From positions 186,001 through 250,000 of the IMG/VR virus record IMGVR_UViG_3300030041_000009: DNA of 64,000 nucleotides; one strand, given 5' to 3'. Below, piece after piece: positions 3,911 to 63,031 of the stretch. A model generated the notes under the pieces. The model saw only the letters and a list, made by a program, of their open reading frames with translations. It ran no database searches and was not told the origin of the DNA. Positions within the stretch are counted from its first letter, which is position 1. Every line of letters begins with the position of its first letter. The position numbers were made by a program, and so were the translations under genes.

Positions 3911-5356
3911 ATGAATGAAAATGAAATAAGTGAAATAATAAGTGAAATAATAAATGAAAGTAATAATTTTGATTCAAATGATATTGAATTAATAAAAAAA
4001 CAAGGAGTTGTATTTACAAAAAGTATAGTATGTGAACAAATAATTGAATATTTAGAGCCAAAAATAACAGATATTATTTGTGAACCAAGTGTTGGTAAAG
4101 GTTCTTTTGTGTTTAGTCTTTTAGAATATTTTAGAAAACAAAATGTCGAATTAAATGATATGATATTTTTTGTTGAAAATAGATTATATTGTTATGATAT
4201 CGATATTAATTTTATAAATATTTTAAAAGAATTATTAAATAGATATTTTAATGTATTAGGATATAATAATCAATTATTATTAGTAAATATACAAAATAGT
4301 GATTTTTTATTTGTTGACATGAAATTTGATATCATATTTGGAAATCCTCCATATGTAAGAATTCAAAATTTAGAAAATGATTATGTTAATAAATTAAAAG
4401 AATTAAATTTTGAAACTATTAAAAAAGGAAATATAGATTTATATTATGCATTTATTGAAAAATCATTAAAAATTAGTAAGAAAGTAGGATTTATTATACC
4501 TAATTCATTTTTAATAAATAAAACAGGAGAAATATTAAGAGAAATTATAAATAATAGATTATTAAAAATATATGATAATAAAAATAATAAAATTTGGGAT
4601 AATATTTCAGCTTATACATGTATAATAATTTGTAATGATATAATTAATGATACTTTTGAATATGAAACAGAATCAGTTTCACAGATATTAAGTAAGAAAA
4701 ATTGTAATTGGTTTAAACAAGAGACATCAAATAATTTAAAAAATATAATTAAATATGCAAATGGCGGAATAGCAACACTTAGAGATAAAATTTACAAATT
4801 TGATTATTCTGATGATAATTATGTTTATAAAAATGATTCTAATATTAAAATAGAAAAAAATATTTGTAAAAAGGCATATAAATCAACTACTAAAAAAGAT
4901 TATTGGTTCATATATCCTTATATTAATAATAAAATTATAACTAAAGATATTTTAATTGAAGATTTTCCGTTAGCATATAAATATCTATTAGATAATAAAT
5001 ATGAATTAAATAAAAGAGATAATGGTAATATTACTAAATTATCTAAATATGATGCATGGTACGGATACGGTAGAAAACAAGGCTTATTAAAAGAACTGAA
5101 TGAAAATGAGATTCAGATAATATTACCTATTACATTTATAAAGGGCAAAATTCATTATAAAATAATGAAATCTCCTACGTTAATATTATCTGGATTATCT
5201 GTTGTTATGGATAAAAAAAATGTTGACTCATTTATTGAAATTATAGAAAGTGAAGATTTTCATAATTATTTAGAAAAAAATAATAAAGTATTATTTGATA
5301 CTGATAAAGAAAAAATATGGTTGACATTAACTACAACATCATTGATAAATTATTAA
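3911..5356 (+). CDS. Orphan N6-adenine DNA methyltransferase (Eco57I/TaqI-like, gamma class)
   Basis: GVVFT, motif I EPSVGKGSF, motif IV GNPPY, DLYYAFIE, FIIPNSF; no adjacent endonuclease recognised. Confidence 0.88.
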   Translation: MNENEISEIISEIINESNNFDSNDIELIKKQGVVFTKSIVCEQIIEYLEPKITDIICEPSVGKGSFVFSLLEYFRKQNVELNDMIFFVENRLYCYDIDINFINILKELLNRYFNVLGYNNQLLLVNIQNSDFLFVDMKFDIIFGNPPYVRIQNLENDYVNKLKELNFETIKKGNIDLYYAFIEKSLKISKKVGFIIPNSFLINKTGEILREIINNRLLKIYDNKNNKIWDNISAYTCIIICNDIINDTFEYETESVSQILSKKNCNWFKQETSNNLKNIIKYANGGIATLRDKIYKFDYSDDNYVYKNDSNIKIEKNICKKAYKSTTKKDYWFIYPYINNKIITKDILIEDFPLAYKYLLDNKYELNKRDNGNITKLSKYDAWYGYGRKQGLLKELNENEIQIILPITFIKGKIHYKIMKSPTLILSGLSVVMDKKNVDSFIEIIESEDFHNYLEKNNKVLFDTDKEKIWLTLTTTSLINY

Positions 5357-6679: not shown

Positions 6680-7450
6680 ATGAAACTAATTGGATTTGCA
6701 AATAAATTTTATACTCTTTGGAGTTATTCAGAAGAACCTTTGTATAGAACAATTAACACTGAATCATATCAATATGGTATTAAACAGAATTATAATTATA
6801 TAAAAAATATTTCTTTTGATTTAGATAAAGTAAAAGAACTTTACCCTGACGTGAAAATTGATGAAGAATTAAAAGGAAAAAGTCAAAGTTGGTCAAAAGA
6901 GCCAAAATTTGAATATCCAGATAAATATTTTCATTTTGGTAAATATGAAAGTCAACTTATTAGTGAATGTAAAGATCAATCTTACTTGATATGGTATTTT
7001 GAAACTGGTGTTTATGGTGAACGTTATGAAATAGTTAAAAATAGATTAATTGAATTAGGTTGTTATTTTTATAATGATATATTATTTACATCAAAAGAAT
7101 TACTTGATCAAAATATTGAACATGAAAAAAAAGAATTTGATAATAAAAAAATAATTGCAGAAACTTATGAAAAATATAAAATTTCTGGTATTTTTTCACA
7201 TAATTTTTATCATTCTTTAAATAGTGAAGGAAATTATAGAGACAATTCATTTGAATTCAGATTCAATGAATATTCTCAACAATCTTATTCTGGTTATGAT
7301 TATGGATTACCATTAATGAATGGTAAATCAAAAAGAATAAAAAATAAAGTTCTCGAAATGGAAGTTATTACAGAAGAAGATAAAACTTTTGGAGATAAAT
7401 ATTTTAGAGTTTTAAGCCTTAAATCAGTAAAAAATATAGAAAATGACTAA
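6680..7450 (+). CDS. hypothetical protein (probable start MKLIGF at 6680)
   Basis: TATCTTTG promoter box at 6645-6652 lies inside the longer called ORF, favouring the ATG at 6680. Confidence 0.7.
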   Translation: MKLIGFANKFYTLWSYSEEPLYRTINTESYQYGIKQNYNYIKNISFDLDKVKELYPDVKIDEELKGKSQSWSKEPKFEYPDKYFHFGKYESQLISECKDQSYLIWYFETGVYGERYEIVKNRLIELGCYFYNDILFTSKELLDQNIEHEKKEFDNKKIIAETYEKYKISGIFSHNFYHSLNSEGNYRDNSFEFRFNEYSQQSYSGYDYGLPLMNGKSKRIKNKVLEMEVITEEDKTFGDKYFRVLSLKSVKNIEND

Positions 7451-8249
7451 TCAAGAATTGATACATGTATTTGAAGACACCAAATCACATAGTTCAGAAA
7501 TGCTAAATTCAGAAACTACATTACATTTATTTGACGAACGATTAATGTCAGATATTAGGATTCCTTGTTATGAAAATATACAGGTTATAAATTCTGATAG
7601 TGTATCTGCAGTTACAGAATATAGTAAATTAGGTAAAACTTGCGTTCTTAATATGGCATCATATAAACATCCAGGTGGCGGAGTTGCAAGAGGATCAAAA
7701 GCACAAGAAGAATGCTTATTTAGATGCTCAAATTTAACTCATGTTATTAATACTGATAACTATCCATTAGGAGACGATAAAGCGTTATATACAAAGAATG
7801 CTGTGTTTTTCAAAGATGTAAATTATAATTATATAAATGAAGTTGAGTCAGATGTTGTAACTATTGCAGCATTAAATCTTAATAATGTAGAAGTTGATTT
7901 TAATGATTATTCTGATACAATTACAAAAGATAATATATCATCAATTAATATTAATTCTGAAAAAATAACGAAATGGGATTATGAAGAACTCACCAAAGAA
8001 AAAATAAGATTAATACTATCTCTTGCTATTAAAAATGATGTAGATATTATAATTTTAGGTTCATTTGGATGTGGAGTATTCAAAAATGATCCTGAAGAAA
8101 TGGCTAAAATGTTCAAACATTTATTAGTAAATGAAGGATATTCTAAATATTTTGAAAAAGTTATATTTGCCATTATCAATGATAGAAACTCAGTAGGTAA
8201 TAATTATGAAATTTTCAAAAATGTTTTTAGTAATTACTATTTAATTTAA
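7443..8249 (+). CDS. TIGR02452/DUF2263-like microbial PARG (macro-domain ADP-ribose glycohydrolase)
   Basis: VLNMAS..PGGG..GSKAQEECLFRCSNL signature; ILGSFGCGVFKNDP. Confidence 0.88.
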   Translation: MTNQELIHVFEDTKSHSSEMLNSETTLHLFDERLMSDIRIPCYENIQVINSDSVSAVTEYSKLGKTCVLNMASYKHPGGGVARGSKAQEECLFRCSNLTHVINTDNYPLGDDKALYTKNAVFFKDVNYNYINEVESDVVTIAALNLNNVEVDFNDYSDTITKDNISSININSEKITKWDYEELTKEKIRLILSLAIKNDVDIIILGSFGCGVFKNDPEEMAKMFKHLLVNEGYSKYFEKVIFAIINDRNSVGNNYEIFKNVFSNYYLI

Positions 8250-8253
8250 TAAA

Positions 8254-9012
8254 ATGAAAAACGCGTTAAGTTTATTACGGTCAAAAAAATTAACTGATAC
8301 TATTAATATGTTATATAAAGATGGTGATTTAGATATAATTTTACCAGAATTATGTAATTTACATACAACTACTAATGGTCATAAAAATAATTATTACCAT
8401 ACATTAGGCGTACTTAATAACGTGATTGAATATGATAATGATAACTTAAAAATGAAAATTGTTGCAGTATTACATGATATTGGTAAAATTTCTGTTAGAT
8501 CTAAAAATGATGATGGAAATTGGACATTTCATGATCATGAAAATGTAGGTGCAAAAATGGTAAAAAAAATATTAAAAAGATTTAATATAACTAATAAGAA
8601 AACTATTGATTATGTTTATAGAATGGTCAAATATCATGGTAGAGTAAAGATGCATAGGGATGTAACAGAATCAGCTATAAGAAGGTTAGATTTAGAAGTT
8701 GGACATGATATAGTATTAGAGTTAATTGAGTTCTGTAAGTGTGATATAACCACTAAATATGATGATAAAAGACAACGTATTATATCAGGATTGGATGAAA
8801 TAAAAAATAGAATATTGGAAGTTCGTAAGAAAGATAATGAATCTAAATGGAGATCACCAATAACAGGAACTATTATTATGGGAATGTTAAATATTACTAC
8901 TGGTAGAATGGTTGGTGATATAAAGAAAGTAACTGATGAAAAAATAAAATCAGGAGAATGGACTGAAGAAGATGCCATCAATTATATTAAAACATTTAAA
9001 AATGAAAACTAA
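8254..9012 (+). CDS. HD-domain phosphohydrolase resembling the C-terminal half of CCA-adding enzymes
   Basis: ILPEL, HKNNYYHTL, AVLHDIGK, WTFHDHENVGA, VTESAIRRL, CDITT, SPITG. Confidence 0.85.
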   Translation: MKNALSLLRSKKLTDTINMLYKDGDLDIILPELCNLHTTTNGHKNNYYHTLGVLNNVIEYDNDNLKMKIVAVLHDIGKISVRSKNDDGNWTFHDHENVGAKMVKKILKRFNITNKKTIDYVYRMVKYHGRVKMHRDVTESAIRRLDLEVGHDIVLELIEFCKCDITTKYDDKRQRIISGLDEIKNRILEVRKKDNESKWRSPITGTIIMGMLNITTGRMVGDIKKVTDEKIKSGEWTEEDAINYIKTFKNEN

Positions 9013-12854: not shown

Positions 12855-13298
12855 ATGAAATATTTAAAAACATTTGAAAATAGGTTTACTAACGTATTTA
12901 AATCTCATGATTTAGATATGTGGAATTCAGCAGTAGAAAATGATTTAATACGAATGGGTATACGAATGGGTTATAATGCCCTGATGCAATCCGCTTATGA
13001 TGGTAATCTTAAAAGATTTATATATTTATTACCTGATTATATTGATAAATTAAATGACATATTAAAATATCAAACAGTTTTATTTTTTGTTATAACAGGT
13101 GAAGGAGATATATATGAAAAAAAGAAAATGATTCAATTATTATTAGATAACGGAATTGATTATAATATAAAATATAAAGGTGAAACATTTTATGATTTAA
13201 TTACAGATGATAAATTGAAAAAATGGCTTGATAAAAAATATCCAGAAATAGTTAAAGAACTTAAACTTAATAAAAATACTGATAAATTTAACATATGA
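12855..13298 (+). CDS. MKYLK/KFNI tagged ankyrin-like protein
   Basis: NALMQSAYDGN, LLLDNGIDYN; TAATATATA at 12841. Confidence 0.8.
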   Translation: MKYLKTFENRFTNVFKSHDLDMWNSAVENDLIRMGIRMGYNALMQSAYDGNLKRFIYLLPDYIDKLNDILKYQTVLFFVITGEGDIYEKKKMIQLLLDNGIDYNIKYKGETFYDLITDDKLKKWLDKKYPEIVKELKLNKNTDKFNI

Positions 13299-13618
13299 AA
13301 TATTTAAAAACATTTGAAAGATTAAATAGAGATATAAAAAAAGGAGATTATGCTATAATTAACTTTGAACCTAGAAACCAAGGGATATCAGTTTTTTTTA
13401 AAAATAATATTTGTAAAATTATTGATATAAGAGGAACCAATCCTATTTGGATTAAGTTTGGATATGAATATGTACCAGATGAACTAATTGAATGTTTTGA
13501 TAAAAAAGGAAAATATTATGTTTATCATATAGAGTTAAATTCAAGTGATGTTGAAAAATATGCTAGAACTAAAGAAGAATTAGAATTAGAATTACAAGCA
13601 AATAAATTTAACTTATGA
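13295..13618 (+). CDS. MKYLK/KFNL tagged protein, GDY subfamily
   Basis: MKYLKTFE..KGDYAI...ANKFNL. Confidence 0.85.
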   Translation: MKYLKTFERLNRDIKKGDYAIINFEPRNQGISVFFKNNICKIIDIRGTNPIWIKFGYEYVPDELIECFDKKGKYYVYHIELNSSDVEKYARTKEELELELQANKFNL

Positions 13619-14187
13619 AATATATAAAACAATTTGAATTAACAAAATTTTATGATGAAAAAGATATATTTAAATATATTTATGAAATTGATTCACCTAA
13701 AATTAAAGAATTGATATCTAAAATCCCAAATATAAATCTTAATATTAAAAATAGTAATGGAGATACTCCTTTAATAATCACTATAAGGTATGGGTTATAT
13801 CAAATATTTAAAATTTTAATTGATTCAGGAGCTGATGTTAATACTACTGATAATTTTGGAAATACTCCATTGATATTAGTAGTACGAAATAAAAAAGAAG
13901 AAATGATTCAAGATTTAATAACAGCAGGAGCAGATATAAATAAAATAAATAATAATAGTGAAACTGCATTAATTGTGAATTCTAATTATAATTATAGAGA
14001 TAAAAAAGCATTAAAAATAACTAAGTTTTTAATTGAAAATGGAGCAGATTGGAATATAACTGATGATATTGACCATACATTTATAGATTATTTACCTCCT
14101 GCATATAGAAAAGAAATTATAGAAGAATATCCAGAAGAATATTCAAATTATTTAATGGTTAAAAATACAAATAAATTTAATATATGA
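13615..14187 (+). CDS. MKYIK/KFNI tagged ankyrin-repeat protein
   Basis: GDTPLI, GADVN, GNTPLI, GADIN, GADWN. Confidence 0.9.
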   Translation: MKYIKQFELTKFYDEKDIFKYIYEIDSPKIKELISKIPNINLNIKNSNGDTPLIITIRYGLYQIFKILIDSGADVNTTDNFGNTPLILVVRNKKEEMIQDLITAGADINKINNNSETALIVNSNYNYRDKKALKITKFLIENGADWNITDDIDHTFIDYLPPAYRKEIIEEYPEEYSNYLMVKNTNKFNI

Positions 14188-14633
14188 AATATATAAAAAC
14201 ATTTGAACATATAATGGATAATGTATTGACATTAAATGATAAAGGATTATTTATAATATCAAATATTCCAGATACAACAACAGAATTATATTGCTATAAT
14301 AATAATTTAAAAGAATTGCCAACATTACCAGAGACATTAGAGATATTATCTTGTTTTAATAATGTTTTGCGTGAGTTACCTACTTTACCGCACTCAATAA
14401 AAAAAATATTTTGCTATTCTAATAATTTAAAAGAATTGCCGACATTACCATATTCATTAAAGACATTAAATTGTAGTAATAATAATTTATCTGAGTTACC
14501 ATTATTACCAGAGACATTAGAAATATTAGTATGTGAAGGTAATAACCTACCTTATAACAATTTAGATGAATATAACAAATGGTTAGAGATAAATCATCCT
14601 GATATATTTAATGCTAAAAAATTTAATATATAG
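14184..14633 (+). CDS. MKYIK/KFNI tagged leucine-rich repeat protein
   Basis: 20-aa LxxLxCxNNxLxELPxLP repeats. Confidence 0.9.
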   Translation: MKYIKTFEHIMDNVLTLNDKGLFIISNIPDTTTELYCYNNNLKELPTLPETLEILSCFNNVLRELPTLPHSIKKIFCYSNNLKELPTLPYSLKTLNCSNNNLSELPLLPETLEILVCEGNNLPYNNLDEYNKWLEINHPDIFNAKKFNI

Positions 14634-14637
14634 TAAT

Positions 14638-14949
14638 ATGAAAATACTAAAATTTAATGAGCATCAATTTACAATGTTAGATGATGATGTTATATTAGCA
14701 GGTAGATCTAAATATCCAGTAGGCACTAAAATCAAATTTAAAGAGGATGATGAGTATTTAACTGGTACTCTTACTCATCCATTTGGTTCCTGTAATGGTG
14801 ATGTTGGAGTGTATCTAGATCAAAAAGGAAAGTACGTGGATGATAGATTATGTTTAAAAAACAGAGAATATATAGTTATTGACGACGAAGTTGAAGAATT
14901 TATGAAAGATTATAAATTAAAACAAGATGCAAACAAATTCAATTTATAA
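14638..14949 (+). CDS. KFNL tagged protein (probable start MKILKFNE)
   Basis: TAATATATA at 14624-14632; ends ANKFNL. Confidence 0.8.
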   Translation: MKILKFNEHQFTMLDDDVILAGRSKYPVGTKIKFKEDDEYLTGTLTHPFGSCNGDVGVYLDQKGKYVDDRLCLKNREYIVIDDEVEEFMKDYKLKQDANKFNL

Positions 14950-14995
14950 GTGAAATAACTTATAAAGTGTATTTATAAGTGAAATAGCTTATAAA
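14943..14995. repeat. two tandem 24-bp palindromes
   Basis: TTTATAAG-TGAAATA(A/G)-CTTATAAA at 14943 and 14972. Confidence 0.7.
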
Positions 14996-14996
14996 T

Positions 14997-15035
14997 AAAA
15001 AATCCTATCTAATTTTTCAATTAGATAGGATTTTT
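14997..15035. terminator. bidirectional intrinsic terminator
   Basis: AAAATCCTATCTAATT..AATTAGATAGGATTTT. Confidence 0.8.
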
Positions 15036-15044
15036 ATTTTATAT

Positions 15045-15920
15045 TGCTTGAGAATACAGCATTATAGAGAAGAACTTTAGAAACTATTATTTTTTCTGCT
15101 TCTTTTCCACCAATCTTTTGAATTGGTACTCCTCCAATGACGGTCAATTAGATTCACCACTCCTTTTGTTGTTAATTACTCTCTTAATAATCATTACTCA
15201 TCTAGAATGCCTTCCAGATTAAATCTTGCGGATTTAGAGAACTTTCTTAAAAATCATGTTGGACTTGGGGTCTTTCACGGCTACGACGAATTGCTTCTCA
15301 TAACTAGTAGTCACCTATCACTAACAACAGTCGAACTCTTTTCCTTTATTTGTTTATTTTAATTTGCATTAAATTTGCAGTTAAAGTTTGTTTTGTGGAT
15401 GATGAAAGTAGTGGTTCGACAACCAGCTTCTCAATCTTTTGAACTGAGCTATACTAAACTACTCTCTGAGATATCCCTACCTCCATATTTTAAGTCAACT
15501 AAGATACTCTCGTAACACTTGGTAATGTTAAGGTAACCTTAATTACAGCACCACCTGTACATTGTATTACAATCTAATTTACCTTTCGGTTTTAAGTCAA
15601 CTTTTATATTGGATAACGCAATTACACAACTGGAAATCGTATTTCTTGCAATAATCCTTCAGGTTATTCTTATTGATGTTCCCATCTCACTCAGACTACC
15701 CACATAGCCTTTGCATTAAACCACTTTCTCTACAGTGTTACCCTCGATAATCAAGGTTTAATGATATCCTGATTGTCTGCTCAAGTATTATTGTTTACAA
15801 TTAATTTTATTTCCGAAAAAATAAAATCAACTGCACATTTAATACCGCAAGTTATAGAAACAACTATAACTCACTTTATACTACTTTCGTAGTTTATTTA
15901 TGACTACAGACAGCCAAATA
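15045..15920 (-). ncRNA. candidate large structured ncRNA (~870 nt)
   Basis: No ORF; markedly higher GC than flanks; many hairpins, including GNRA-capped CTAC-GAAA-GTAG, ACC-GAAA-GGT and AAATC(C)-GCAA-GATTT on the minus strand; boxA-like motif upstream and terminator downstream. Confidence 0.7.
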
Positions 15921-15947
15921 TTTTCAATTTTACAAAGAACGCTTTAA

Positions 15948-16087
15948 AAAAACAACAGAATTAATATAGAAGAATTTTAAATAAGACTTAACAAAAGCGA
16001 TAGAAAGACATTAACTTTCTGCTCATTATTGATCCACTTTCCTGGAATTTCAACCTACATAATTTTATATTAATTCATGTTGTTTTA
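15948..16087 (-). ncRNA. candidate rod-shaped small RNA
   Basis: Ends pair: AAAACAACAGAATTAATATA / TATATTAATTCATGTTGTTTT. Confidence 0.45.
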
Positions 16088-16257
16088 AAAGTTCAAGTAC
16101 TTTTACTTGAAAATGTCACAAATCTATTTCAGTCCTTTGTTCTTCACAGAACTTTATCATTGGAACAATAAACATTTGGTTATGTTCATTATATCTACTC
16201 TTGTAATATAAATCCTTGAATTTTTATTACTTTTGCAATATTTACTTTTGTAATATT

Positions 16258-16583
16258 AATCTCTCCTTTTGCAAGCTTCAAGGTGGCTATTGCCTTTGAT
16301 TATTTTTATTACTTTTTCAATTTCATTAATATCTAAGTGTGTTTAATTGCACTATCTCCTTTTGCAAGCTTCAAGGTGGTTTCTATCCCATTAGATTTTT
16401 TAGTTACTTATACAATATTTAATATCTAAGTGTGTTTAATTGCACTATCTCCTTTTGCAAGCTTCAAGGTGGTTTCTATCCCATTAGATTTTAATTGTTT
16501 CAGCAAGATACTTAATATATAAGTTGTGTTCATTTGCACTATCTCCTTTTGCAAGCTTCAAGGTGGTTTTTGTACCATTATAT
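16258..16583 (-). repeat. tandem structured-RNA repeat A: one partial copy plus three 66-67 bp copies at 93-bp period
   Basis: Cores at 16331-16396, 16424-16489, 16517-16583; partial at 16258-16301. Confidence 0.9.
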
Positions 16584-16973
16584 TTTTATTGCTTCAATCT
16601 GAAATTTGATTTGTTTCATTATTGTAGTCCAAATTTACAAAAAGTTTTTTGTTTTACCAAATATTTTTGAATTTTTATACTTTTTTAAATTAATAATAAT
16701 CTTACTAATCATAAATTGAAGTATCACATGGAAGCAATAAACTAGTTTCAATTAGATGATTATTATTTATTAAGTACAAAATTACAAAAAGTTTTTTGTT
16801 TTACCAAATATTTTTGAATTTTTTCTACATTTTTTTCAAGTACTCTTACTTGAAATGAGTATTAAAAAAAATCTTTTATCAGTTCTTTTAGCTTCTCAGC
16901 TTAGAAAAAATAAATTTTCATTTATCATATTTATTCTTGTAATTTAATAATCTTACGATTATTATCATTATCA

Positions 16974-17041
16974 ATCTAAGAGTGTTTAATTGCACTATCT
17001 TTCCTTTTGCAAGCTTCAAGGTGGTTTTTATCCCATTAGAT
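16974..17041 (-). ncRNA. structured repeat A, copy 5
   Basis: Same 68-bp cloverleaf motif just downstream of promoter at ~17085-17120. Confidence 0.75.
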
Positions 17042-17372
17042 TATCTATTAAATCTGAATTATGATTTTCTTTTTTATTGTAGTTCAAATTTACAAAAAGT
17101 TTTTTGTTTTACCAAATATTTTAATGTTAAAGTTTGAACTATTTTTCAAGTACTCCTACTTGTTTTTATCCAAGGAATTTTGATTAAATAATGTTATTAA
17201 ATCATATTATTTAAATTAACAGCTCTTTTTCAAGAGATTTCAATTAATTAATATACATTTTTTAATATTTATTATTTAACCAAAACTCGCTTGTTGTTGG
17301 TTATGAATATCAATAGTGGAACTTACTTTCAGAACAAGTTCTGATTTTCAGTGTTGAAATCAATATTCATAG

Positions 17373-17464
17373 TGAAGATAGAAGGAATTGAACCTTGTGT
17401 CATTGACACTTGCCCCTTCAAATTAGATTATTCTAATAATGATGCACCCTGTGTGCTTATCTCC
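17373..17464 (-). ncRNA. tRNA-like RNA lacking a canonical anticodon loop
   Basis: Acceptor GGAGATA/TATCTTC, D-like GCAC..GTGC, T-arm AAGG-TTCAATT-CCTT. Confidence 0.55.
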
Positions 17465-18076
17465 AACATTTTATAATTTAATCAATAATCAGTCCTTGTA
17501 GTGGAATGAAAGTAGTTAGTCACGTCTCATCTAACATTAGGATTTTATCATATTCGAAATTTAATTCCAATATTCAATCTCCACGGTGTGGTTGCTTTGT
17601 ATATTTATAACAAGATAAGTTCTACATGTCTTATATATCTGTTTCAATGGACTGTCTATCTTTGATAATATTGATTATTTAAGATTATAATCTTATCATT
17701 GACTCACCACTATGAGCTTCTCATTCATCTGGTTGATATATATTTTCTTATAAATATATACACTCAGAGCGCAAATCTCGCTGATATTTCTTGTTTAAAT
17801 CTGATTTTTTGATTTAAATTATTATAGAATAAATTTACAAAAAGTTTTTTGTTTTACCAAATATTTTTGAAAGTATTTTCTATTTTTTCTCAAGTACGTT
17901 TACAAGAGTAAATAAAAATCAAATCATTTTCAGTCCTTTTTATCTTCACAGATTAGAAACAGTAAGTTTGAACTTACTATATTTACTTTTGTAATATTAA
18001 ATTTATTTTCAAGTTTCACTATAAACTTTTTCAAGATTAAAGTTTGTTTCCTTACTACTAAATTATTATTACATTA

Positions 18077-18144
18077 ATCTAAGTGTGTTCATTTGCACTA
18101 TCTATACTCTCGCAAGCTTTGAGTTGGTTTTTGTACCATTAGAT
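18077..18144 (-). ncRNA. structured repeat A, copy 6 (diverged, compensatory changes)
   Basis: Inner stem ACTC/GAGT replaces CCTT/AAGG. Confidence 0.75.
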
Positions 18145-18850
18145 TTTTTTCAATCTGAAGTTTGATTTGTTTTTTATTGTAGTTCAAAGTTACAAAAAGT
18201 TTTTTGTTTTACCAAATATTTTAATGTTAAAGTTTGAACTTTTTTCAATTGAAATTTAATTTTTTAAAACTATATTTCTTTTTGAATTGTAGTTCAAAGT
18301 TACAAAAAGTTTTTTGTTTTACCAAATATTTTTGAAAGTTTTTTCTACTTTTTTTCAATTAAAATATAATTTTTATAATTACTTTTCTTTTGATGTTGTA
18401 GTTCAAAATTACAAAAAGTTTTTTGTTTTACCAAATATTTAATGTTAAAGTTTTGAACTTTTTTTCTCAAGTACTCTTACTTGATATTTTTTGTTGTAGA
18501 ATAAAATTACAAAAAGTTTTTTGTTTTACCAAATATTTAATGATAAAGTTTTGAAGTTTTTTTTTTTCAATACTATTACTTAAAAATTTTTGTTTTTTTA
18601 TTGTAGAATAAAATTATAAAAATGTTTTCATTTCACCAAATATTTAATGTTAAAGTTTTGAAATTTTTTTCAAGTCCTCTTATTAAATTATCAAATCAAC
18701 TAAGATATTTATTATTTTTCTTAGTTGATTTGATTGTAAATAATTACATTTGTTTTTGTTTGTGATGCAAAATTACTAAAAGTTTTCATATCACCAAATA
18801 TTTTAGTGTTAAATTTTAAAATATTTTTTAAATATTTATATATCAATAAA

Positions 18851-19180
18851 TTAATATTCTATATCGTAATAAAAACATAAATCTTTCATTGAGAAAAATA
18901 CTAATGTATCATTATTAGTTGCAAAATCAACTTCTTTATCTGCTCCGCTTGATTCTCCTGGTAATCTTAATATACAATCACAACTTTTTATCCATTCTAA
19001 ATCTAATTTCAACCAATCTTCATATGGTCTGGGATGATGCATATGTTGAAAATGGAAATATAATGGAACGAATGGCGCAAATCCTTTATTTATTAATTCA
19101 TCTGCCATATCAATTTGAGTTTTGACATTAACTGCAGGATCTCCTTTTGTATAAGGAGATGCAATATAAACTTTAATCAT
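18851..19180 (-). CDS. nucleoside deoxyribosyltransferase-like / DUF4406-type protein
   Basis: VYIASPYT, DLEWIKSCD..LRLPGESSGADKE. Confidence 0.75.
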   Translation of the reverse strand: MIKVYIASPYTKGDPAVNVKTQIDMADELINKGFAPFVPLYFHFQHMHHPRPYEDWLKLDLEWIKSCDCILRLPGESSGADKEVDFATNNDTLVFFSMKDLCFYYDIEY

Positions 19181-19403
19181 ATTATTTATTTTATTTTTAT
19201 ACTAAAAATTCTAATGCAAGAAAAGCTAACACAAGAAGAATAACGCCAATTGTCATAATTATATTATTAGTTCTTTGAGTTTTACATGTACAATTTTTAT
19301 TTTTATGCCCACAAACTTCACATATCATATCGTCATTAATATCTTCTAACCATTTTTTATCGTCCTGCATATTTGATTTTTATTTTTTAATATATATGGT
19401 ATT

Positions 19404-19931
19404 ATGAAAAATATAAAAAGTTTTGATAAATACAATGAAGATGTACTAACTGATGGTTTTACTCCTGAAAATACTAGGTATAACGCAGGAATAAAAGCAA
19501 ATAAATTAATAGAACAACTTAAAAATTTATTATTACCTATTGGTAAATTAACTGAACAAGTAGTTACTAAATCAATAATATCAATAAATTCTCTAAATAG
19601 ACTCATTAATGATGAGATTATTGAAGATGAAGCAATGATAATTCAATTAAAAAAATCAGATCCTACAAATACTATATTTAATGTAATAAAAAACATAGAA
19701 GTTAATCCAAATGGAATAAATAGATCAACAAATAAATATTCTGCTACAATCAATTCTTTATGGTTAGGTGGTAATAAATATAATTTAGCAGTAAAACCTT
19801 TATCATATTGGTTAAATTTAGCTAAAAAGGATAGAGAAACTGAGAATATAATATCTAATCAATTATGCGGTTGGATTAATGCTAATATAAATTTAATAAT
19901 TGAATCTTTAAAAAAAATAACTCACAAATGA
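19404..19931 (+). CDS. hypothetical protein with MKxIKxF..YNE N-terminal motif
   Basis: TAATATATA at 19388. Confidence 0.7.
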   Translation: MKNIKSFDKYNEDVLTDGFTPENTRYNAGIKANKLIEQLKNLLLPIGKLTEQVVTKSIISINSLNRLINDEIIEDEAMIIQLKKSDPTNTIFNVIKNIEVNPNGINRSTNKYSATINSLWLGGNKYNLAVKPLSYWLNLAKKDRETENIISNQLCGWINANINLIIESLKKITHK

Positions 19932-20467
19932 GCAAAATAATAAAAATTGGAATAATAATTTTATCTTTACTAATAGTTACATTTATAATTTATAAATTAT
20001 CTACAGTTAAAGATAAACCATTTGATAAAATTGAATTTTATAAATATCATCATATTTATAATTTAACTAATAAATCATATTTAGATACTATAGTAGAATC
20101 AGGACTAAGATCACTTAAAATTGATACCGTAACTGTTATAATTAAAAATATTCAACAGACATCAGAAGAAATTAATGGAGAAGATATTGAATTAAAAGCA
20201 TATATAGTGGATTCTAATGATATATATTATATTCTTATTGGAAATTATGATAGAAGTCAAAATATTACTATATTATCTCATGAATTAATTCATTTAAAAC
20301 AATATTATGATAAAACATTAATCATTAGCAAAAGTGGTGCATATTTATGGTTGAATGAAGTGGTTGATATATCAGATATGAATTATGATCAACGTCCTTG
20401 GGAAGTAGAAGCGTTTGATGGTCAATCAGATAATGCAAAAAATATGAAAAATATTTTATATAAATAA
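19928..20467 (+). CDS. membrane-anchored zincin metallopeptidase-like protein
   Basis: N-terminal TM helix; HELIHLKQ; YDQRPWEVEA. Confidence 0.75.
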   Translation: MSKIIKIGIIILSLLIVTFIIYKLSTVKDKPFDKIEFYKYHHIYNLTNKSYLDTIVESGLRSLKIDTVTVIIKNIQQTSEEINGEDIELKAYIVDSNDIYYILIGNYDRSQNITILSHELIHLKQYYDKTLIISKSGAYLWLNEVVDISDMNYDQRPWEVEAFDGQSDNAKNMKNILYK

Positions 20468-21215: not shown

Positions 21216-21815
21216 ATGAAAAAATTATCAATATTATTAATTTTTATGTTTGCAACATTATTTTCTTTTTCTCAAAGAACTAATGTTATAGTCAAAAACG
21301 ACATTTATACTGTATCATACAATGAGGTATATAAGCAACCTAATTGGGTTATTTATTATATAACTAATGTGACAAAGAATGTTTCAAGAGCAGGAATGGA
21401 TTTTTATGAAGTTCCAGGTATAATTACTTCAACTAATGCGGATTATTTGAATAATGTATGGGATAAAGGACATTTAGCTCCAGCCGCAACTTTTTCTGAT
21501 ACTAAAAATCATTTATATGAAACATTTTCATATTTAAATTGCTCTTTGCAATATTATACATTAAATAGAGTAACATGGGAACATTTAGAAAACTATGAAA
21601 GAACTACTCTATTTACTAAATATAAAAAATTGACAGTTAAAGTTGTATTAGATTTTACTGGAAATTTATTAATTCTAAAATCTGGTGCTCATGTTCCTAA
21701 TGGATTTTACAAACAAATAATATCGCCTACTAATGATACATTAACTTATTATTTTCCAAATAAAAATTTACCAAATGATTTTCAATTTTACAAAATAAAA
21801 AATAGAAAACTATAA
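21216..21815 (+). CDS. secreted DNA/RNA non-specific endonuclease (NucA/EndA-like)
   Basis: Signal peptide; WDKGHLAPAA, TFSYLNCSLQ..LNR..W..LE, VPNGFYK. Confidence 0.88.
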   Translation: MKKLSILLIFMFATLFSFSQRTNVIVKNDIYTVSYNEVYKQPNWVIYYITNVTKNVSRAGMDFYEVPGIITSTNADYLNNVWDKGHLAPAATFSDTKNHLYETFSYLNCSLQYYTLNRVTWEHLENYERTTLFTKYKKLTVKVVLDFTGNLLILKSGAHVPNGFYKQIISPTNDTLTYYFPNKNLPNDFQFYKIKNRKL

Positions 21816-22495: not shown

Positions 22496-24145
22496 ATGTT
22501 AAACTATAATGATTATAATAAACTAAATGAAGCTTTTTTTCATCGTAGTAAAGATGAATTGGAAAACCTTATTCATTCTTTTAAAAGCTTAATTATAAAT
22601 TTGAAGCAATCTATTGATAAAAAATACACATTAGATTTCTATAAAACTCAAATTAAAGAAGATTTAGAATCATATAAAACATATTTATTAAATAATTATA
22701 ATAAAAATACTATGGGTAAATTTAAAGATTTATTTAAAGATTTTTTAAATAATGTAGATGATGATATAATTAAACAGATGAGATTAGGTAAATTTGCTAA
22801 TGATATTCTAAAAATATATTCTATAACAAATTCATTTGATATTAATATAAAGAATGCAGATAGTGTTTTCAAAGCATATCTTGATAATGTTGATAGATAT
22901 ATAGATAACACTTATGAATTTTTCTACAATAAAATTGAAACTGATAAGTCATATGAACCATATAATAAAATAGATATTAAAATAAATAAAGTACCTTTTG
23001 ATGATTATCAAAAAACAAAATATAAATATCAAATAGAATTATTGAAATTACAAGAGTGGATTGTATATAATAATAAAAAAGTGTTAATTATATTTGAAGG
23101 TAGAGATGCAGCAGGAAAAGGATCTGCAATTAGAAATATAACAAGATTTCTTGATCCTAAGCATTTTAAAGTTCAAACTTTTGGTATTCCTTCAGAAGAA
23201 GAAAGTGATAATTGGTTTGAAAGATATGAAAAAGTGTTACCTAAAAACGGTGAAATTGTGTTCTTTGATAGATCTTGGTATACAAGAGGTTATGTAGAAC
23301 CTGTAATGGGATATTCAAATGAAGATAAATATAATAAATTCATGAAAGAAGTCAATAATTTTGAAGATAAATTAATTGATGATGATATAATACTTATAAA
23401 AATATGGTTTTCTATATCTCAGGATGTACAAAAAATGAGGTTTGAATTAAGAAAATCTAACCCATTAAAATATTGGAAATTTAGTAAGAATGATGAACAA
23501 ACTTTAGATAAATGGGACGAATTTACTAAATATATAAATGAAATTTTCAAAAAAACAAATACTAAAAATGCTCCTTGGATAATAATAGATGCAGATGATG
23601 AAAATTATTCCAGATTAGAATCATTTAATGGTATAATAAAAACTATTGAAAAAGATAAAGAAAAAGAAAAAGATGGAGGAATAAAAGTAATATTTGAAGA
23701 TATTGATGGACCACTTATTCCTTATAATAAAAATTCTGATGTAAATTATCATAAATTTTTTAATGAGCCTGATAAATGGAGTAAAACTGCCATGAGTAAT
23801 TTAAACACAATAATTGAAAAAACAGATGCTAAAGTTGTTTTATCTTCATCATATAGAGATGATAAACCTAAAAGTAAAATAGAAGATATGATGAAAAAAG
23901 CAGGTTTTAAATATAAAATATATGACTGTGTTCCAAATGACAAATCTAAAAAAAGAGGTGCCGATATAAAAGATTGGTTGAAAAATAATAAAATAGTTAG
24001 TAATTTTATAATTATAGATGATAATAAGCATGATTTATATGATGTATTTAATAAAAAACATATTGTTAAAACCACTCATGAATTAGGTATAACAGATGAT
24101 ATTATGAATGAAGCAATTGAAAAGTTAAATAATAATAATAAATAA
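22496..24145 (+). CDS. ppk2: polyphosphate kinase 2 fused to a C-terminal HAD-like domain
   Basis: FEGRDAAGKG Walker A, FFDRSWY, PLKYWKFS, APWIII; C-terminal IFEDIDGPL, VLSSS, RGADI..WL, FIIIDD. Confidence 0.88.
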   Translation: MLNYNDYNKLNEAFFHRSKDELENLIHSFKSLIINLKQSIDKKYTLDFYKTQIKEDLESYKTYLLNNYNKNTMGKFKDLFKDFLNNVDDDIIKQMRLGKFANDILKIYSITNSFDINIKNADSVFKAYLDNVDRYIDNTYEFFYNKIETDKSYEPYNKIDIKINKVPFDDYQKTKYKYQIELLKLQEWIVYNNKKVLIIFEGRDAAGKGSAIRNITRFLDPKHFKVQTFGIPSEEESDNWFERYEKVLPKNGEIVFFDRSWYTRGYVEPVMGYSNEDKYNKFMKEVNNFEDKLIDDDIILIKIWFSISQDVQKMRFELRKSNPLKYWKFSKNDEQTLDKWDEFTKYINEIFKKTNTKNAPWIIIDADDENYSRLESFNGIIKTIEKDKEKEKDGGIKVIFEDIDGPLIPYNKNSDVNYHKFFNEPDKWSKTAMSNLNTIIEKTDAKVVLSSSYRDDKPKSKIEDMMKKAGFKYKIYDCVPNDKSKKRGADIKDWLKNNKIVSNFIIIDDNKHDLYDVFNKKHIVKTTHELGITDDIMNEAIEKLNNNNK

Positions 24146-29029: not shown

Positions 29030-29751
29030 TATTTTTGAAATGATGGTTTCAACCACATCTTAGTATGATTAAATACATAATCTCTCAATTCAGGAAATTC
29101 ATTCAACATCAAAATTGTTTTTAATGTATCAAATTTAAAACACTTGGTAAGTTCATCTTGAATTCTTTCATTTGAAACTACTTGCATTTTTGATTCATAA
29201 TCATAATTTTTAATAGCAACTTCAATATCATCAGTCATTCTGAAACCTTTTGTAATACAAAAACGCTCACAACGTAAAATCCGTAATGGATCCTCATCAA
29301 ATGTAAGTTGGCAAGGTCTTGGCGTTCTAAGAATACCCATTTTAAGATCTTTTACTCCATCAAATAAATCAATCAAATTTTCATCTTCATCAAGTGCCAT
29401 AGCATTCAATGTGAAATCACGTCTGATTAAATCATCTTCAAGTGTACCAAGTTCTAAAATTGGACGTCTTGTTCCTTCGTAATAACCAATTTCCTTTCTA
29501 GCCATTACAAAATCTGCAGTTAACCCTTCATGCTTATGTCCTTTTGGAAACTTTGCTTTGATTGTGAAACATCTTGGAGTTGAATTATATACGGTGTAGC
29601 CATTTTTACGTAACCACAAGTCCATTGACATGAATCCAGATTCAACTGATTGATTCTTGTCATCCAATACAAAAGTAAAGTCTATATCTTTACAATCAAC
29701 TCCTAAGATACGGTCACGTACACATCCGCCCACTTCATAAATTTTTGGCAT
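29029..29751 (-). CDS. cca: tRNA nucleotidyltransferase (CCA-adding/poly(A) polymerase class II), catalytic half without HD domain
   Basis: VGGCVRD, KDIDF, DLIRRDFTLNAMA, EDPLRILR, SNERI. Confidence 0.88.
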   Translation of the reverse strand: MPKIYEVGGCVRDRILGVDCKDIDFTFVLDDKNQSVESGFMSMDLWLRKNGYTVYNSTPRCFTIKAKFPKGHKHEGLTADFVMARKEIGYYEGTRRPILELGTLEDDLIRRDFTLNAMALDEDENLIDLFDGVKDLKMGILRTPRPCQLTFDEDPLRILRCERFCITKGFRMTDDIEVAIKNYDYESKMQVVSNERIQDELTKCFKFDTLKTILMLNEFPELRDYVFNHTKMWLKPSFQK

Positions 29752-30378: not shown

Positions 30379-31317
30379 TTAGAAGAAATTAGCAGCATCA
30401 ATATATTTGAATCCACATCTTTTAGCAAATGTTTTATCACTTGTTAAATCTCCAACCATTATGCATTGAGATGGATCAAGTTTATATTTTTCAATAAATT
30501 CTATTCCTAGTCCAACTCCTGGTTTTCTACAATAGCAAGTTATTGGAGGAACTGAATGCCCACAATATTTATAATCAATATTAACTCCTAGCATTTCATT
30601 TGTTTTTTCAAAACAAGCTATTGCTGTATCATTAGATAATAATCCTTTTGCTATTCCACTTTGATTTGAAACTCCAAGTAATATATAACCTTGACTTTGT
30701 AATTCTAAAAGTTTTTCTGTTCTACCTGGAATTATTTCAATATCACTAATATCAGTTGGATAATGTTCACCACTTTTAGTTAATCTCAATGTACCATCAT
30801 AATCAAATAAAATTGCTTTATTTTTATATTCTGATGAATAACGTTTAAAATCTATTTTTTCTATATCATCAATACCTTCTGATAATTCAGGTGCTTCAAA
30901 ATTTTTATTAATTTTATAAAGTGCAGCAACAGGAAACATATGTGGATCATTAGAGTTAGAATATTCACTTAATTCTGTGAATAATTTACCATATTTTCTT
31001 ATCATTCTTGTTACCTGATTGAACATACAATCTTCAATTTTTGTAGTAAAATGAATACATAATATATAATAATTATATTTTTTTGCTAATTCAATAACAT
31101 CAGCCCTAGATAATTTAGTTGAATATGTTCCATCTAATACAATATCCACGCCATCTAACATTAATTGTTCAAGTTTTTTATTAAGAGAACTTAATGTATC
31201 TCCTTCAATATCTCTTGATAGTAATGTACATTTATAATCAACATATTTTTCAATGATGCTTGATTTACCTGCTGCTGGTAATCCACAAGATATGACTAAT
31301 TTTTTATCTTTTTTCAT
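30379..31317 (-). CDS. polynucleotide kinase / HAD phosphatase (PNKP-like)
   Basis: GLPAAGKS P-loop, VLDGT; HAD FDYDGTL, SNQSG, CRKP, MVGD. Confidence 0.85.
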   Translation of the reverse strand: MKKDKKLVISCGLPAAGKSSIIEKYVDYKCTLLSRDIEGDTLSSLNKKLEQLMLDGVDIVLDGTYSTKLSRADVIELAKKYNYYILCIHFTTKIEDCMFNQVTRMIRKYGKLFTELSEYSNSNDPHMFPVAALYKINKNFEAPELSEGIDDIEKIDFKRYSSEYKNKAILFDYDGTLRLTKSGEHYPTDISDIEIIPGRTEKLLELQSQGYILLGVSNQSGIAKGLLSNDTAIACFEKTNEMLGVNIDYKYCGHSVPPITCYCRKPGVGLGIEFIEKYKLDPSQCIMVGDLTSDKTFAKRCGFKYIDAANFF

Positions 31318-44566: not shown

Positions 44567-44659
44567 AAAGAAAGGTTGGATTCGAACCAACATAAATGAA
44601 TATTTTTTATATAAACGCTTTTTTGGCTTTACTAGTCTGACCTTTTGACTTACTTTCTT
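44567..44659 (-). ncRNA. tRNA-like RNA / pseudo-tRNA
   Basis: Acceptor AAGAAAG/CTTTCTT, D-arm AGTC..GACT, T-arm GTTGG-TTCGAAT-CCAAC; no canonical anticodon arm. Confidence 0.6.
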
Positions 44660-62927: not shown

Positions 62928-62960
62928 AAAAATAAATATACCTTATGAAAAATATATTTG

Positions 62961-63031
62961 TGCTCACTATCGGATTCAAACCGATGTAGGTAGTTTTAGA
63001 GGCTACCGCCCTATCACTGGACTAAATGAGC
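62961..63031 (-). tRNA. tRNA with CUA anticodon (amber suppressor), no encoded CCA
   Basis: Acceptor GCTCATT/AGTGAGC+A, D-stem GTCC/GGGC, anticodon arm GTAGC-CTCTAAA-ACTAC, T-arm ATCGG-TTTGAAT-CCGAT; 71 nt. Confidence 0.85.

What the first reader, a model, noticed from the sequence alone, without database searches (positions are those of the whole stretch)
16258..18144. Six copies of a ~67-nt cloverleaf RNA with compensatory mutations and an invariant palindromic loop
Seen (minus strand): AUCUAA-UGG[GAUAGAAA]CCA-CCUU[GAAGCUUGCAA]AAGG-AGAUA-GUG[CAAUUAAA]CAC-AC-UUAGAU. Covariation: the outer stem becomes AUAUAA/UUAUAU in the 16517 copy; the middle stem becomes ACUC/GAGU in the 18077 copy; the first arm becomes GGC/GCC in the partial copy. 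The two side loops change together (UA..UA to CA..UG), suggesting a D/T-like loop-loop contact, although only two haplotypes support this. The middle loop keeps self-complementary AAGCUU in all six copies and includes CUUGC(A/G)A, like a tRNA-Ala(UGC) anticodon loop. Three copies are tandem at 93 bp with unique linkers. Inference: a tRNA-mimic decoy, an antitoxin-mimic array (as for ToxI mimics) or a kissing-loop multimerising RNA.
Basis: partly seen in the sequence, partly recalled or inferred. Interest (0 to 1): 0.87.

Follow-up and report, generated by a model that had tools for sequence, protein, structure and literature searches.

The report
Cloverleaf RNA modules beside phage GOLLD
A huge phage from peat carries several copies of a new 66-68-nt four-armed RNA module, each showing the same 11-nt loop, in the position next to the giant GOLLD RNA where related phages carry tRNA genes; the module is real and conserved, and it is found in RNA libraries, but its function is unknown.

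Summary
The window has five full copies, one half copy and one decayed copy of a 66-68-nt unit on the minus strand. Only three related peat/permafrost huge-phage lineages carry it, giving 15 distinct full units. The four-way junction is the minimum-free-energy fold and the RNAalifold consensus. 98.7% of pair cells are paired, and three pairs show double compensatory changes. G-U pairs place the RNA on the minus strand. The proposed contact between the two side loops is not supported.

The units are not tRNAs and match no Rfam family. They are domains of three paralogous small-RNA genes. Each gene has a Bacteroidota-type promoter (TTTG-N20-TAnnTTTG), a leader, one to five units, a GNRA hairpin and a predicted closing helix. 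These genes lie with a roughly 650-nt RNA carrying a degenerate tRNA-like domain, directly upstream of a GOLLD RNA and on the same strand. Related phages have promoter-driven tRNA-Met genes in this position. Contigs from at least 20 metatranscriptome runs hold about half to three quarters of the array's sampled 31-mers.

The function is inferred, not shown. I favour a multicopy trans-acting decoy or sponge that acts through the invariant loop RAAGCUUGCRA. The main rivals are kissing-loop assembly, possibly with GOLLD, and a cis role for the GOLLD transcript. It is a new RNA family of moderate to high interest.

The parts
16331..16396 (-). Cloverleaf unit in the tandem array of gene T4; identical to the next copy
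   Evidence: Model R1, 97.9 bits; fold
16424..16489 (-). Cloverleaf unit in the T4 array
   Evidence: Model R1, 97.9 bits
16517..16583 (-). Cloverleaf unit, first in the T4 array; outer stem AUAUAA/UUAUAU
   Evidence: Model R1, 89 bits; pair 3-68 is A-U
16265..16294 (-). Half unit ending the array: arm 2 (GGC/GCC) plus arm 3 with the invariant loop. It is kept in all three lineages; there the stem is ACUU/AAGU.
16974..17041 (-). Single cloverleaf unit of gene T3
   Evidence: Model R1, 93.2 bits
18077..18144 (-). Single cloverleaf unit of gene T1; middle stem ACUC/GAGU
   Evidence: Model R1, 88.8 bits
18005..18063 (-). Decayed second unit of T1; the loop palindrome is lost, and the copy is absent in lineage L013
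   Evidence: Model R1, 27.7 bits; alignment A7
16630..16661 (-). Bacteroidota-type promoter (TTTG-N20-TAnnTTTG) of the array gene T4
   Evidence: consensus from PMC7366714
17085..17116 (-). Promoter of T3
18185..18216 (-). Promoter of T1
17830..17861 (-). Promoter of T2, the large RNA with a tRNA-like domain
18295..18798 (-). Five more promoter copies (18295-18326, 18404-18435, 18502-18533, 18609-18640, 18768-18798), each followed by about 60 nt or less. A sixth copy lies at 16777-16808.
16596..16612 (-). Leader motif AAAUCA..UUCAGAUU of T4, the 5' strand of the predicted closing helix. Equivalents lie at 18152-18168 (T1) and 17051-17067 (T3).
16119..16151 (-). 3' module of T4: hairpin UUCU-GUGA-AGAA, then GGACUGAAA and GAUUUG, the 3' strand of the closing helix. 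Equivalents lie at about 17920-17953 (T1) and 16870-16901 (T3). The hairpin stem covaries (AUCU/AGAU, AGCU/AGCU, UUCU/AGAA).
16094..16109 (-). Terminal hairpin CAAGUA-N-UACUUG that closes each gene. Other copies lie at 16837-16852, 17147-17162, 17889-17908 and 18468-18483.
   Evidence: (family D9)
17163..17829 (-). T2: an RNA of about 650 nt conserved in all three lineages (about 510 nt in L002), with no Rfam match. It contains a degenerate tRNA-like domain at 17370-17464 with a 7-bp acceptor stem, a D arm, a long variable arm and the loop UUCAAUU.
15045..15466 (-). GOLLD RNA, the part covered by the Rfam model
   Evidence: RF02032, 278.9 bits, E 1.6e-78
15467..15915 (-). GOLLD 5' domain, conserved with L002, L013 and the 634-kb phage LR745206
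14998..15035 (.). 17-bp bidirectional terminator that ends the RNA island

Best explanation
What is shown. The 66-68-nt unit is a folded four-way-junction domain of a new family of phage small RNAs. Each genome has three paralogous genes (T1, T3, T4). Each gene has its own strong Bacteroidota-type promoter and carries one to five units, placed between a conserved leader and a conserved 3' module. These genes lie directly upstream of GOLLD and on the same strand, where related phages carry promoter-driven tRNA genes. Sequence from the array is present in many metatranscriptomes.

What is inferred. The variable stems only hold up a constant 11-nt loop, RAAGCUUGCRA, and a constant junction. The loop is present 6-8 times per genome, and the half copy that keeps only arms 2 and 3 is itself conserved. 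I therefore read the module as a display scaffold, and the RNAs as trans-acting multicopy decoys or sponges that bind and titrate a sequence-specific partner through that loop.

The most likely partner is a protein that normally handles tRNA-like RNA, for example a host tRNA-directed nuclease. Three observations point that way: the units occupy a tRNA-island position; the 3' part of the loop, CUUGCRA, fits the anticodon-loop pattern Y-U-NNN-R-N; and the same window encodes a tRNA-repair set (polynucleotide kinase-phosphatase, RNA ligase, a CCA-adding-type nucleotidyltransferase, and PPK2 fused to a HAD_SAK_2 domain, which Pfam describes as the HAD domain of 'Swiss Army Knife' RNA repair proteins). 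The partner has not been identified.
For: Structure: one search gives 98.7% of cells paired, three pairs with double changes and no shuffle out of 500 reaching the covariation score; one search gives the same cloverleaf from RNAalifold; the half copy adds a further C-G to A-U change in arm 3.

Strand: U-G and G-U pairs occur only on the minus strand, which is also the strand of the promoters and of GOLLD.

Selection: between the paralogs T1 and T3 the unit is 88% identical, against 34-63% in the leader, middle and tail and 80% in the 3' module. The loop AAGCUUGC is invariant.

Promoters: eight perfect copies of a 26-mer occur only in this island. They fit TTTG-N20-TAnnTTTG, and the same motif sits upstream of ORFs at about 50836 and 11603.

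Context: all three lineages have the same order T1, T2, T3, T4, GOLLD. LR745206 and L264 have repeated promoters of the same type driving tRNA-Met and other small RNAs before GOLLD.

Expression: contigs of at least 20 metatranscriptome runs hold 48-73% of the sampled 31-mers of the array, and 47-64% of those of the whole island.

Repair genes.
Against: No partner is known and nothing here tests binding.

The unit shows no detectable homology to tRNA. Its arm lengths (6/3 and 3-5/4 bp) and its connectors differ from those of tRNA.

The whole transcript is predicted to close on itself. The units may therefore work as parts of a larger RNA rather than as free tRNA-sized decoys.

Only three closely related lineages exist, so the covariation rests on few events, and the two 3-bp arms are unsupported.

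The RNA-run evidence consists of contigs, not reads. It gives no ends, no strand and no comparison with the flanking genes, and DNA carry-over is not excluded.
Confidence: 0.4

Rival explanations
1. Kissing-loop assembly RNA. The self-complementary AAGCUU in each loop pairs with the same loop on other units or other molecules. Multi-unit transcripts would then form networks, possibly attached to or packed within the GOLLD cage made from the neighbouring gene.
For: The 6-nt palindrome is invariant and predicted to be unpaired. The computed loop duplex is -6.7 kcal/mol, and an extended dimer is 8.9 kcal/mol more stable than two monomers. Several loops per transcript give multivalency. GOLLD forms a hollow 14-mer cage, and tRNAs linked to it have been suggested as cargo (bioRxiv 10.1101/2024.12.08.627333). 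No full consensus promoter lies between the array and GOLLD.
Against: Invariance extends beyond the palindrome (AAGCUUGC plus its flanks). No unit shows a compensated change inside the palindrome, so the constraint looks like recognition of a sequence rather than pairing alone. The only complementary site in GOLLD (UUGCAAG, 15645-15651) is predicted to be base-paired inside GOLLD. A -7 box, TAGATTTG, at about 16126 could give GOLLD its own promoter. Four of the six pairs are A-U, so the contact would be weak.
Confidence: 0.2
2. Cis-acting elements of the GOLLD operon. The units would act on their own transcript, as processing sites, stabilisers, or elements that modify RNA polymerase and so ensure synthesis of the long GOLLD RNA.
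For: The array lies directly upstream of GOLLD on the same strand, and the hairpin between them lacks a U-tract.
Against: T1 and T3 carry the same unit but are separate genes, each ending in its own hairpin, 0.8-2 kb from GOLLD and with other promoters in between. A cis role does not explain the conservation of stand-alone single-unit genes.
Confidence: 0.1
3. Mimic of a type III antitoxin (ToxI-like). A repetitive RNA would bind and neutralise a host ToxN/AbiQ-type endoribonuclease.
For: It is a repetitive phage RNA array without an adjacent ORF; phage pseudo-ToxI escape is a known precedent (from my own knowledge, not checked here).
Against: The units are 66-68 nt, separated by 17-100-nt linkers that are conserved between orthologous arrays, and are often solitary. 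ToxI-type repeats are 34-45 nt and directly head to tail (from my own knowledge). The repeats diverge with compensatory changes. No ToxN gene was found in the 214 kb, although the control for that search found nothing anywhere.
Confidence: 0.04
4. Non-functional remnants: decaying tRNA pseudogenes, or DNA-level repeats such as iterons, protein-binding palindromes or mobile-element ends.
For: The island shows duplication and decay: empty promoter units, the decayed copy at 18005-18063 and the degenerate tRNA-like domain in T2. The fold z-scores are near zero.
Against: Compensatory changes keep the pairing. The G-U pairs would be A.C on the other strand. The loop is invariant, and paralog identity is 88% in the unit against 34% in the middle segment that follows it. 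Each gene has a dedicated promoter, and the sequence is present in many RNA libraries.
Confidence: 0.05

Closest known systems
tRNA genes and tRNA islands next to GOLLD in phages
   Same: Same genomic position and layout: small RNA genes on the same strand, each behind a repeated Bacteroidota-type promoter, directly upstream of GOLLD. The literature notes GOLLD near tRNA islands. The unit has a four-arm cloverleaf topology and is of similar size.
   Different: No match to tRNA models. The loop has 11 nt instead of a 7-nt anticodon loop. There is no UUCRANY T-loop and no GG in the D-loop. The acceptor and T stems are 6 and 3 bp instead of 7 and 5. The connectors sit at different positions, and there is no CCA. 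The units are predicted to be embedded in a larger closed transcript.
Phage RNA decoys of defence proteins (pseudo-ToxI; RNA anti-CRISPRs that mimic CRISPR repeats)
   Same: A multicopy, strongly promoted, non-coding phage RNA with a constant element repeated several times. The proposed logic of titrating a host RNA-binding protein is the same.
   Different: No similarity to ToxI or to CRISPR repeats. The best CRISPR-DR hit scores 16 bits at E = 7 and lies on the opposite strand. The repeats diverge, and the linkers are inherited rather than acquired.
Kissing-loop dimerisation hairpins (HIV-1 DIS type)
   Same: A 6-nt self-complementary sequence flanked by purines in a large hairpin loop.
   Different: The loop has 11 nt rather than 9, the palindrome is A-U-rich, the hairpin sits in a four-way junction, and there are several per transcript. 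Dimerisation has not been tested.
Bacterial Y RNAs (YrlA) with a tRNA-like domain
   Same: A non-decoding, tRNA-like small RNA found in a genome that also encodes RNA-repair genes.
   Different: No Ro/TROVE gene in the 214 kb. No Rfam YrlA hit. No canonical T-loop.

Membership tests
tRNA (RF00005) | Scores against tRNA covariance models or tRNA finders | tested here: not met
   Rfam found no tRNA hit in 13000-20000 at E up to 10, nor in 16320-16600. ARAGORN makes no call at standard settings. Only at the very relaxed -ps70 setting does it call 'tRNA-Lys', and on the opposite strand.
tRNA (RF00005) | 7-nt anticodon loop on a 5-bp stem; T-loop UUCRANY; G18 G19 in the D-loop; 12-bp acceptor/T stack | tested here: not met
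   The unit has an 11-nt loop on a 4-bp stem, side loops CAAUUAAA/CAAAUGAA and AUAGAA, and stems of 6 and 3 bp.
GOLLD-linked small-RNA (tRNA) island | Small RNA genes on the same strand directly upstream of a GOLLD RNA | tested here: met
   GOLLD lies at 15045-15466 on the minus strand with 279 bits, and the units lie 0.9-2.7 kb upstream on the same strand. All three lineages have the same order. The analogous tRNA layout is seen in L254 and L264.
GOLLD-linked small-RNA (tRNA) island | The small RNAs are decoding tRNAs | tested here: not met
   See the tRNA rows above. ARAGORN finds no tRNA within 3.5 kb upstream of the GOLLD motif in L002 or L013, and none in the window's island.
Type III toxin-antitoxin antitoxin RNA (ToxI-like) | Short (34-45 nt) direct head-to-tail repeats without linkers | tested here: not met
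   The units are 66-68 nt and the linkers 17-100 nt; T1 and T3 each carry a single full unit.
Type III toxin-antitoxin antitoxin RNA (ToxI-like) | Adjacent ToxN/AbiQ-family endoribonuclease gene | tested here: inconclusive
   No ORF of 50 aa or more lies between the array and GOLLD. PF13958 was not found in the 214 kb, but the control genomes also gave no hit. For a phage mimic the toxin would be in the host, which is unknown.
CRISPR array or RNA anti-CRISPR repeat mimic | Near-identical repeats separated by unrelated acquired spacers; similarity to a CRISPR repeat family | tested here: not met
   The repeats diverge with compensatory changes. The first and last linkers are orthologous between lineages. 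The best CRISPR-DR match scores 16.3 bits at E = 7 on the plus strand. cas genes were not searched for.
Bacterial Y RNA (YrlA) | Ro60/TROVE partner gene; match to the YrlA model | tested here: not met
   PF05731 is absent from the 214-kb record, and the controls did respond. There is no Rfam hit. The record is estimated to be only about 30% of the genome.
Kissing-loop dimerisation element | Self-complementary hexamer exposed in a hairpin loop | tested here: met
   AAGCUU is invariant, with an unpaired probability of about 0.8-0.9.
Kissing-loop dimerisation element | Loop-dependent dimer or multimer formation | not testable with these tools
   Only computed energies are available.

The most novel reading that the evidence does not exclude
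The cloverleaf modules are the natural partner or cargo of the GOLLD cage. In this phage clade the tRNAs that usually precede GOLLD have been replaced by non-decoding four-arm RNAs, possibly co-transcribed with GOLLD. That would mean GOLLD acts on a compact tRNA-sized folded RNA rather than on decoding as such. It would also provide a defined RNA pair for reconstitution.
Probability: 0.12. Interest if true: 0.85.

Novelty: new variant of a known kind. Interest (0 to 1): 0.62.

Why it matters
The function of GOLLD is an open question: it forms a hollow 14-mer cage and usually sits beside tRNA genes. This clade keeps the island layout but replaces the tRNAs with a conserved cloverleaf that does not decode and has a constant loop. 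This makes it possible to test what the neighbouring RNAs of GOLLD are for: decoding, acting as decoys, or serving as cargo. Independently of GOLLD, this is a new structured RNA family from uncultured huge phages that probably infect Bacteroidota. It is found in many peat and permafrost metatranscriptomes and is a candidate RNA-based counter-defence element.

Tried and rejected
1. Read-level expression. The single read-laying run failed on a filter at 18809-18845 and was counted. No transcript ends, strand or depth could be obtained.

2. Wider family search. A loose pattern in viral contigs returned 117 loci. Cmsearch over the 76 newly listed ones gave no hit, so those are chance matches. The metagenome scan added only further contigs of the same three lineages. 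L009 and L014 are chance matches inside a coding sequence. A scan with the promoter motif found the same contigs. The scan of prokaryotic genomes found nothing.

3. tRNA ancestry. Rejected by Rfam and ARAGORN.

4. Contact between the two side loops. Rejected with 15 units.

5. Docking of the unit loop on GOLLD. The one complementary site (15645-15651) is predicted to be paired inside GOLLD, with covariation.

6. My first reading of the 3' motif CUGUGAAG as the partner of the leader was wrong. It is a local GNRA hairpin with a covarying stem. The leader pairs instead with CUGAA and UGAUUUG further downstream.

7. Alternative registers for arm 3 (UUG/CAA with a 7-nt loop, or CUU-GCRA-RAG). They are less well supported than CCUU/AAGG, whose outer pair takes three forms.

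8. Resemblance of the outer stem to the Cas12a repeat handle. Rejected because the stem covaries at a position that is fixed in that handle (the Cas12a side is from memory only).

9. Coding potential. There is no ORF of 50 aa or more across the array, and TAA stops occur in all frames even if TAG is read as sense.

10. Classifying GOLLD loci with a second sequence motif. My regular expression was too strict, so I did not use the result.
Full report
**What is there.** The window is part of a 214.5-kb viral record with 22% G+C, estimated to be about 30% complete. Between 14998 and about 18800 there is no ORF of 50 aa or more apart from two short ORFs that are probably chance. On the minus strand this stretch holds a GOLLD RNA at 15045-15466 (RF02032, 278.9 bits). 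The GOLLD 5' domain extends to at least 15915, and a 17-bp bidirectional terminator lies at 14998-15035.

**Check of the observation.**
- Five full units (16331-16396, 16424-16489, 16517-16583, 16974-17041, 18077-18144), a half unit (16265-16294) and a decayed copy (18005-18063) are present.
- A 19-nt core occurs five times against none expected.
- The cloverleaf is the minimum-free-energy fold of each unit, but it is no more stable than shuffled sequence (z between 0.1 and -0.5). The case for structure is therefore comparative.

**Relatives.** Pattern scans of IMG/VR and JGI metagenomes, followed by a covariance model (R1), found the unit in only three related lineages. These are the window type, L002/L011/L201/L238, and L008/L013/L146. 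All come from peat or permafrost samples. Single matches elsewhere are chance, and 185,579 prokaryotic species genomes hold none.

**Structure across the 15 distinct full units.**
- 98.7% of pair cells are standard pairs.
- Pair 3-68 is C-G, A-U or G-C. Pair 22-40 is C-G, A-U or U-A. Pair 25-37 is U-A, C-G or U-G.
- No shuffle out of 500 reaches the covariation score, and structures with partners slid by 1-3 columns pair at 54% or less.
- RNAalifold predicts the same four helices without guidance.
- The half copy adds another C-G to A-U change in arm 3 (CCUU/AAGG in the window, ACUU/AAGU in the other lineages).
- An inserted U turns UGGU..ACCA into UGGUA..UACCA in two units, which supports arm 2.
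- The two 3-bp side arms otherwise never vary.
- The U-G and G-U pairs would be mismatches on the plus strand, so the RNA is on the minus strand.

**The unit is a domain of larger genes.**
- A 26-nt sequence occurs eight times without a mismatch, and only in this island. With two diverged copies there are ten.
- It reads TTTG-N20-TAnnTTTG, the consensus of the primary sigma factor of Bacteroidota (PMC7366714). Looser copies of the motif sit in front of ORFs elsewhere in the window. I read these copies as promoters and the host as probably a member of Bacteroidota.
- All three lineages have the same order: promoter-T1 (one unit plus a decaying one), promoter-T2 (an RNA of roughly 650 nt in the window and 510 nt in L002), promoter-T3 (one unit), promoter-T4 (three to five units plus the half unit), then GOLLD.
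- T1, T3 and T4 share four features. These are a leader (AAAUCA..UUCAGAUU), a small hairpin with a GNRA loop and a covarying stem, the motif GGACUGAAA..GAUUUG, and a terminal hairpin.
- RNAalifold pairs the leader with the 3' motif, so each transcript is predicted to close on itself around its units. These helices are A-U-rich and rest on one covarying pair, so I treat this as a prediction.
- Between the paralogs T1 and T3 the unit is 88% identical, the 3' module 80%, and the other segments 34-63%.
- No full consensus promoter lies between T4 and GOLLD. A lone -7 box (TAGATTTG, about 16126) is conserved there, so co-transcription is possible but open.

**Comparison with other GOLLD loci.**
- In the 634-kb phage LR745206 and in IMG/VR locus L264, repeated promoters of the same type drive tRNA-Met and other small RNAs just before GOLLD.
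- Of 99 viral loci that hold a conserved GOLLD 16-mer and have enough upstream sequence, 50 have a tRNA on the same strand upstream. In 40 of these the nearest is tRNA-Met. Some of the 16-mer hits may be chance.
- The lineages studied here stand out for repeated sequence upstream of GOLLD.
- The literature also places GOLLD near tRNA islands and suggests tRNAs as possible cargo of its 14-mer cage.
- The cloverleaf genes therefore occupy the place of tRNA genes.

**What it is not.**
- It is not a tRNA: there is no Rfam or ARAGORN call, the loop has 11 nt, there are no T- or D-loop signatures, and the stems are 6 and 3 bp.
- It matches no Rfam family.
- It does not resemble a ToxI array or a CRISPR array.
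- The record holds no Ro/TROVE gene.

**Expression.** Contigs from at least 20 metatranscriptome runs hold 48-73% of the sampled 31-mers of the array, and 47-64% of those of the whole island. This supports transcription but is not proof. I could not obtain read-level data.

**Mechanism.** The variable stems, the invariant loop RAAGCUUGCRA, the invariant junction, the 6-8 loops per genome, the strong promoters and the conserved half unit point to a scaffold that displays the loop to a partner.
- I favour a trans-acting decoy or sponge (0.4). The most likely partner is a factor that acts on tRNA-like RNA. The reasons are the tRNA-island position, the anticodon-loop-like CUUGCRA, and a repair gene set in the window. 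That set comprises PPK2 fused to HAD_SAK_2 at 22496-24145, a kinase-phosphatase at 30379-31317, an RNA ligase at 54818-55840 and a CCA-adding-type enzyme near 29326-29739.
- Kissing-loop assembly through AAGCUU is the main rival (0.2). The one complementary site in GOLLD is predicted to be paired internally.
- A cis role for GOLLD (0.1), a ToxI mimic (0.04) and non-functional remnants (0.05) are less likely.

**Verdict.** This is a real, conserved and probably well-expressed new RNA family of unknown function. Its main value is as a natural variant of the GOLLD-tRNA association.

Noticed in passing
window 15045-15915 (-): A complete GOLLD RNA (Rfam part 15045-15466, 279 bits) with a conserved 5' domain. 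It ends at a 17-bp bidirectional terminator at 14998-15035.
   Followed up: yes
window 17163-17829 (-), tRNA-like part 17370-17464: A promoter-driven RNA of roughly 650 nt (about 510 nt in L002), conserved in all three lineages and without an Rfam match. It contains a degenerate tRNA-like domain: a 7-bp acceptor stem GGAGAUA/UAUCUUC, a D arm, a hairpin with a tetraloop in place of the anticodon arm, a long variable arm and the loop UUCAAUU. The T stem is not maintained in L002 or L013.
   Followed up: partly
window 16630-18798 (-): Ten copies of a Bacteroidota-type promoter (TTTG-N20-TAnnTTTG), eight of them with an identical 26-nt core found nowhere else in the 214 kb. Five tandem copies at 18295-18798 are followed by only about 60 nt or less.
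   Followed up: partly
window 18152-18168, 17798-17815, 17051-17067, 16596-16612; L254 about 6660; L264 about 6975: The motif UUCAGAU(U) recurs shortly after the promoters of GOLLD-linked small-RNA genes in three unrelated phage contigs. Its meaning is unknown.
   Followed up: no
window 22496-24145 (+), 29326-29739 (-), 30379-31317 (-), 54818-55840 (-), 8254-9012 (+): A set of RNA-repair-type genes: PPK2 fused to a HAD_SAK_2 domain, a PolyA_pol/CCA-adding-type nucleotidyltransferase, a polynucleotide kinase-phosphatase, an RNA ligase with a PHA02142 OB fold, and an HD-domain protein.
   Followed up: partly
window 62960-63031 (-), 44567-44659 (-); genome 108773-108936: A suppressor-type tRNA with anticodon CUA (ARAGORN labels it tRNA-Pyl), a 93-nt tRNA hit that may contain an intron, and two tRNA-Gln genes elsewhere in the record. 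This could indicate TAG recoding. Treating TAG as sense raises coverage by long open frames only from 82% to 88%.
   Followed up: partly
window 12855-14633 (+): Ankyrin-repeat and leucine-rich-repeat proteins are encoded next to the RNA island, which is unusual for a phage.
   Followed up: no
window 3911-5356 (+), 7443-8249 (+), 21216-21815 (+): An Eco57I-type N6 DNA methylase, a microbial-type PARG domain protein and a non-specific DNA/RNA endonuclease.
   Followed up: no
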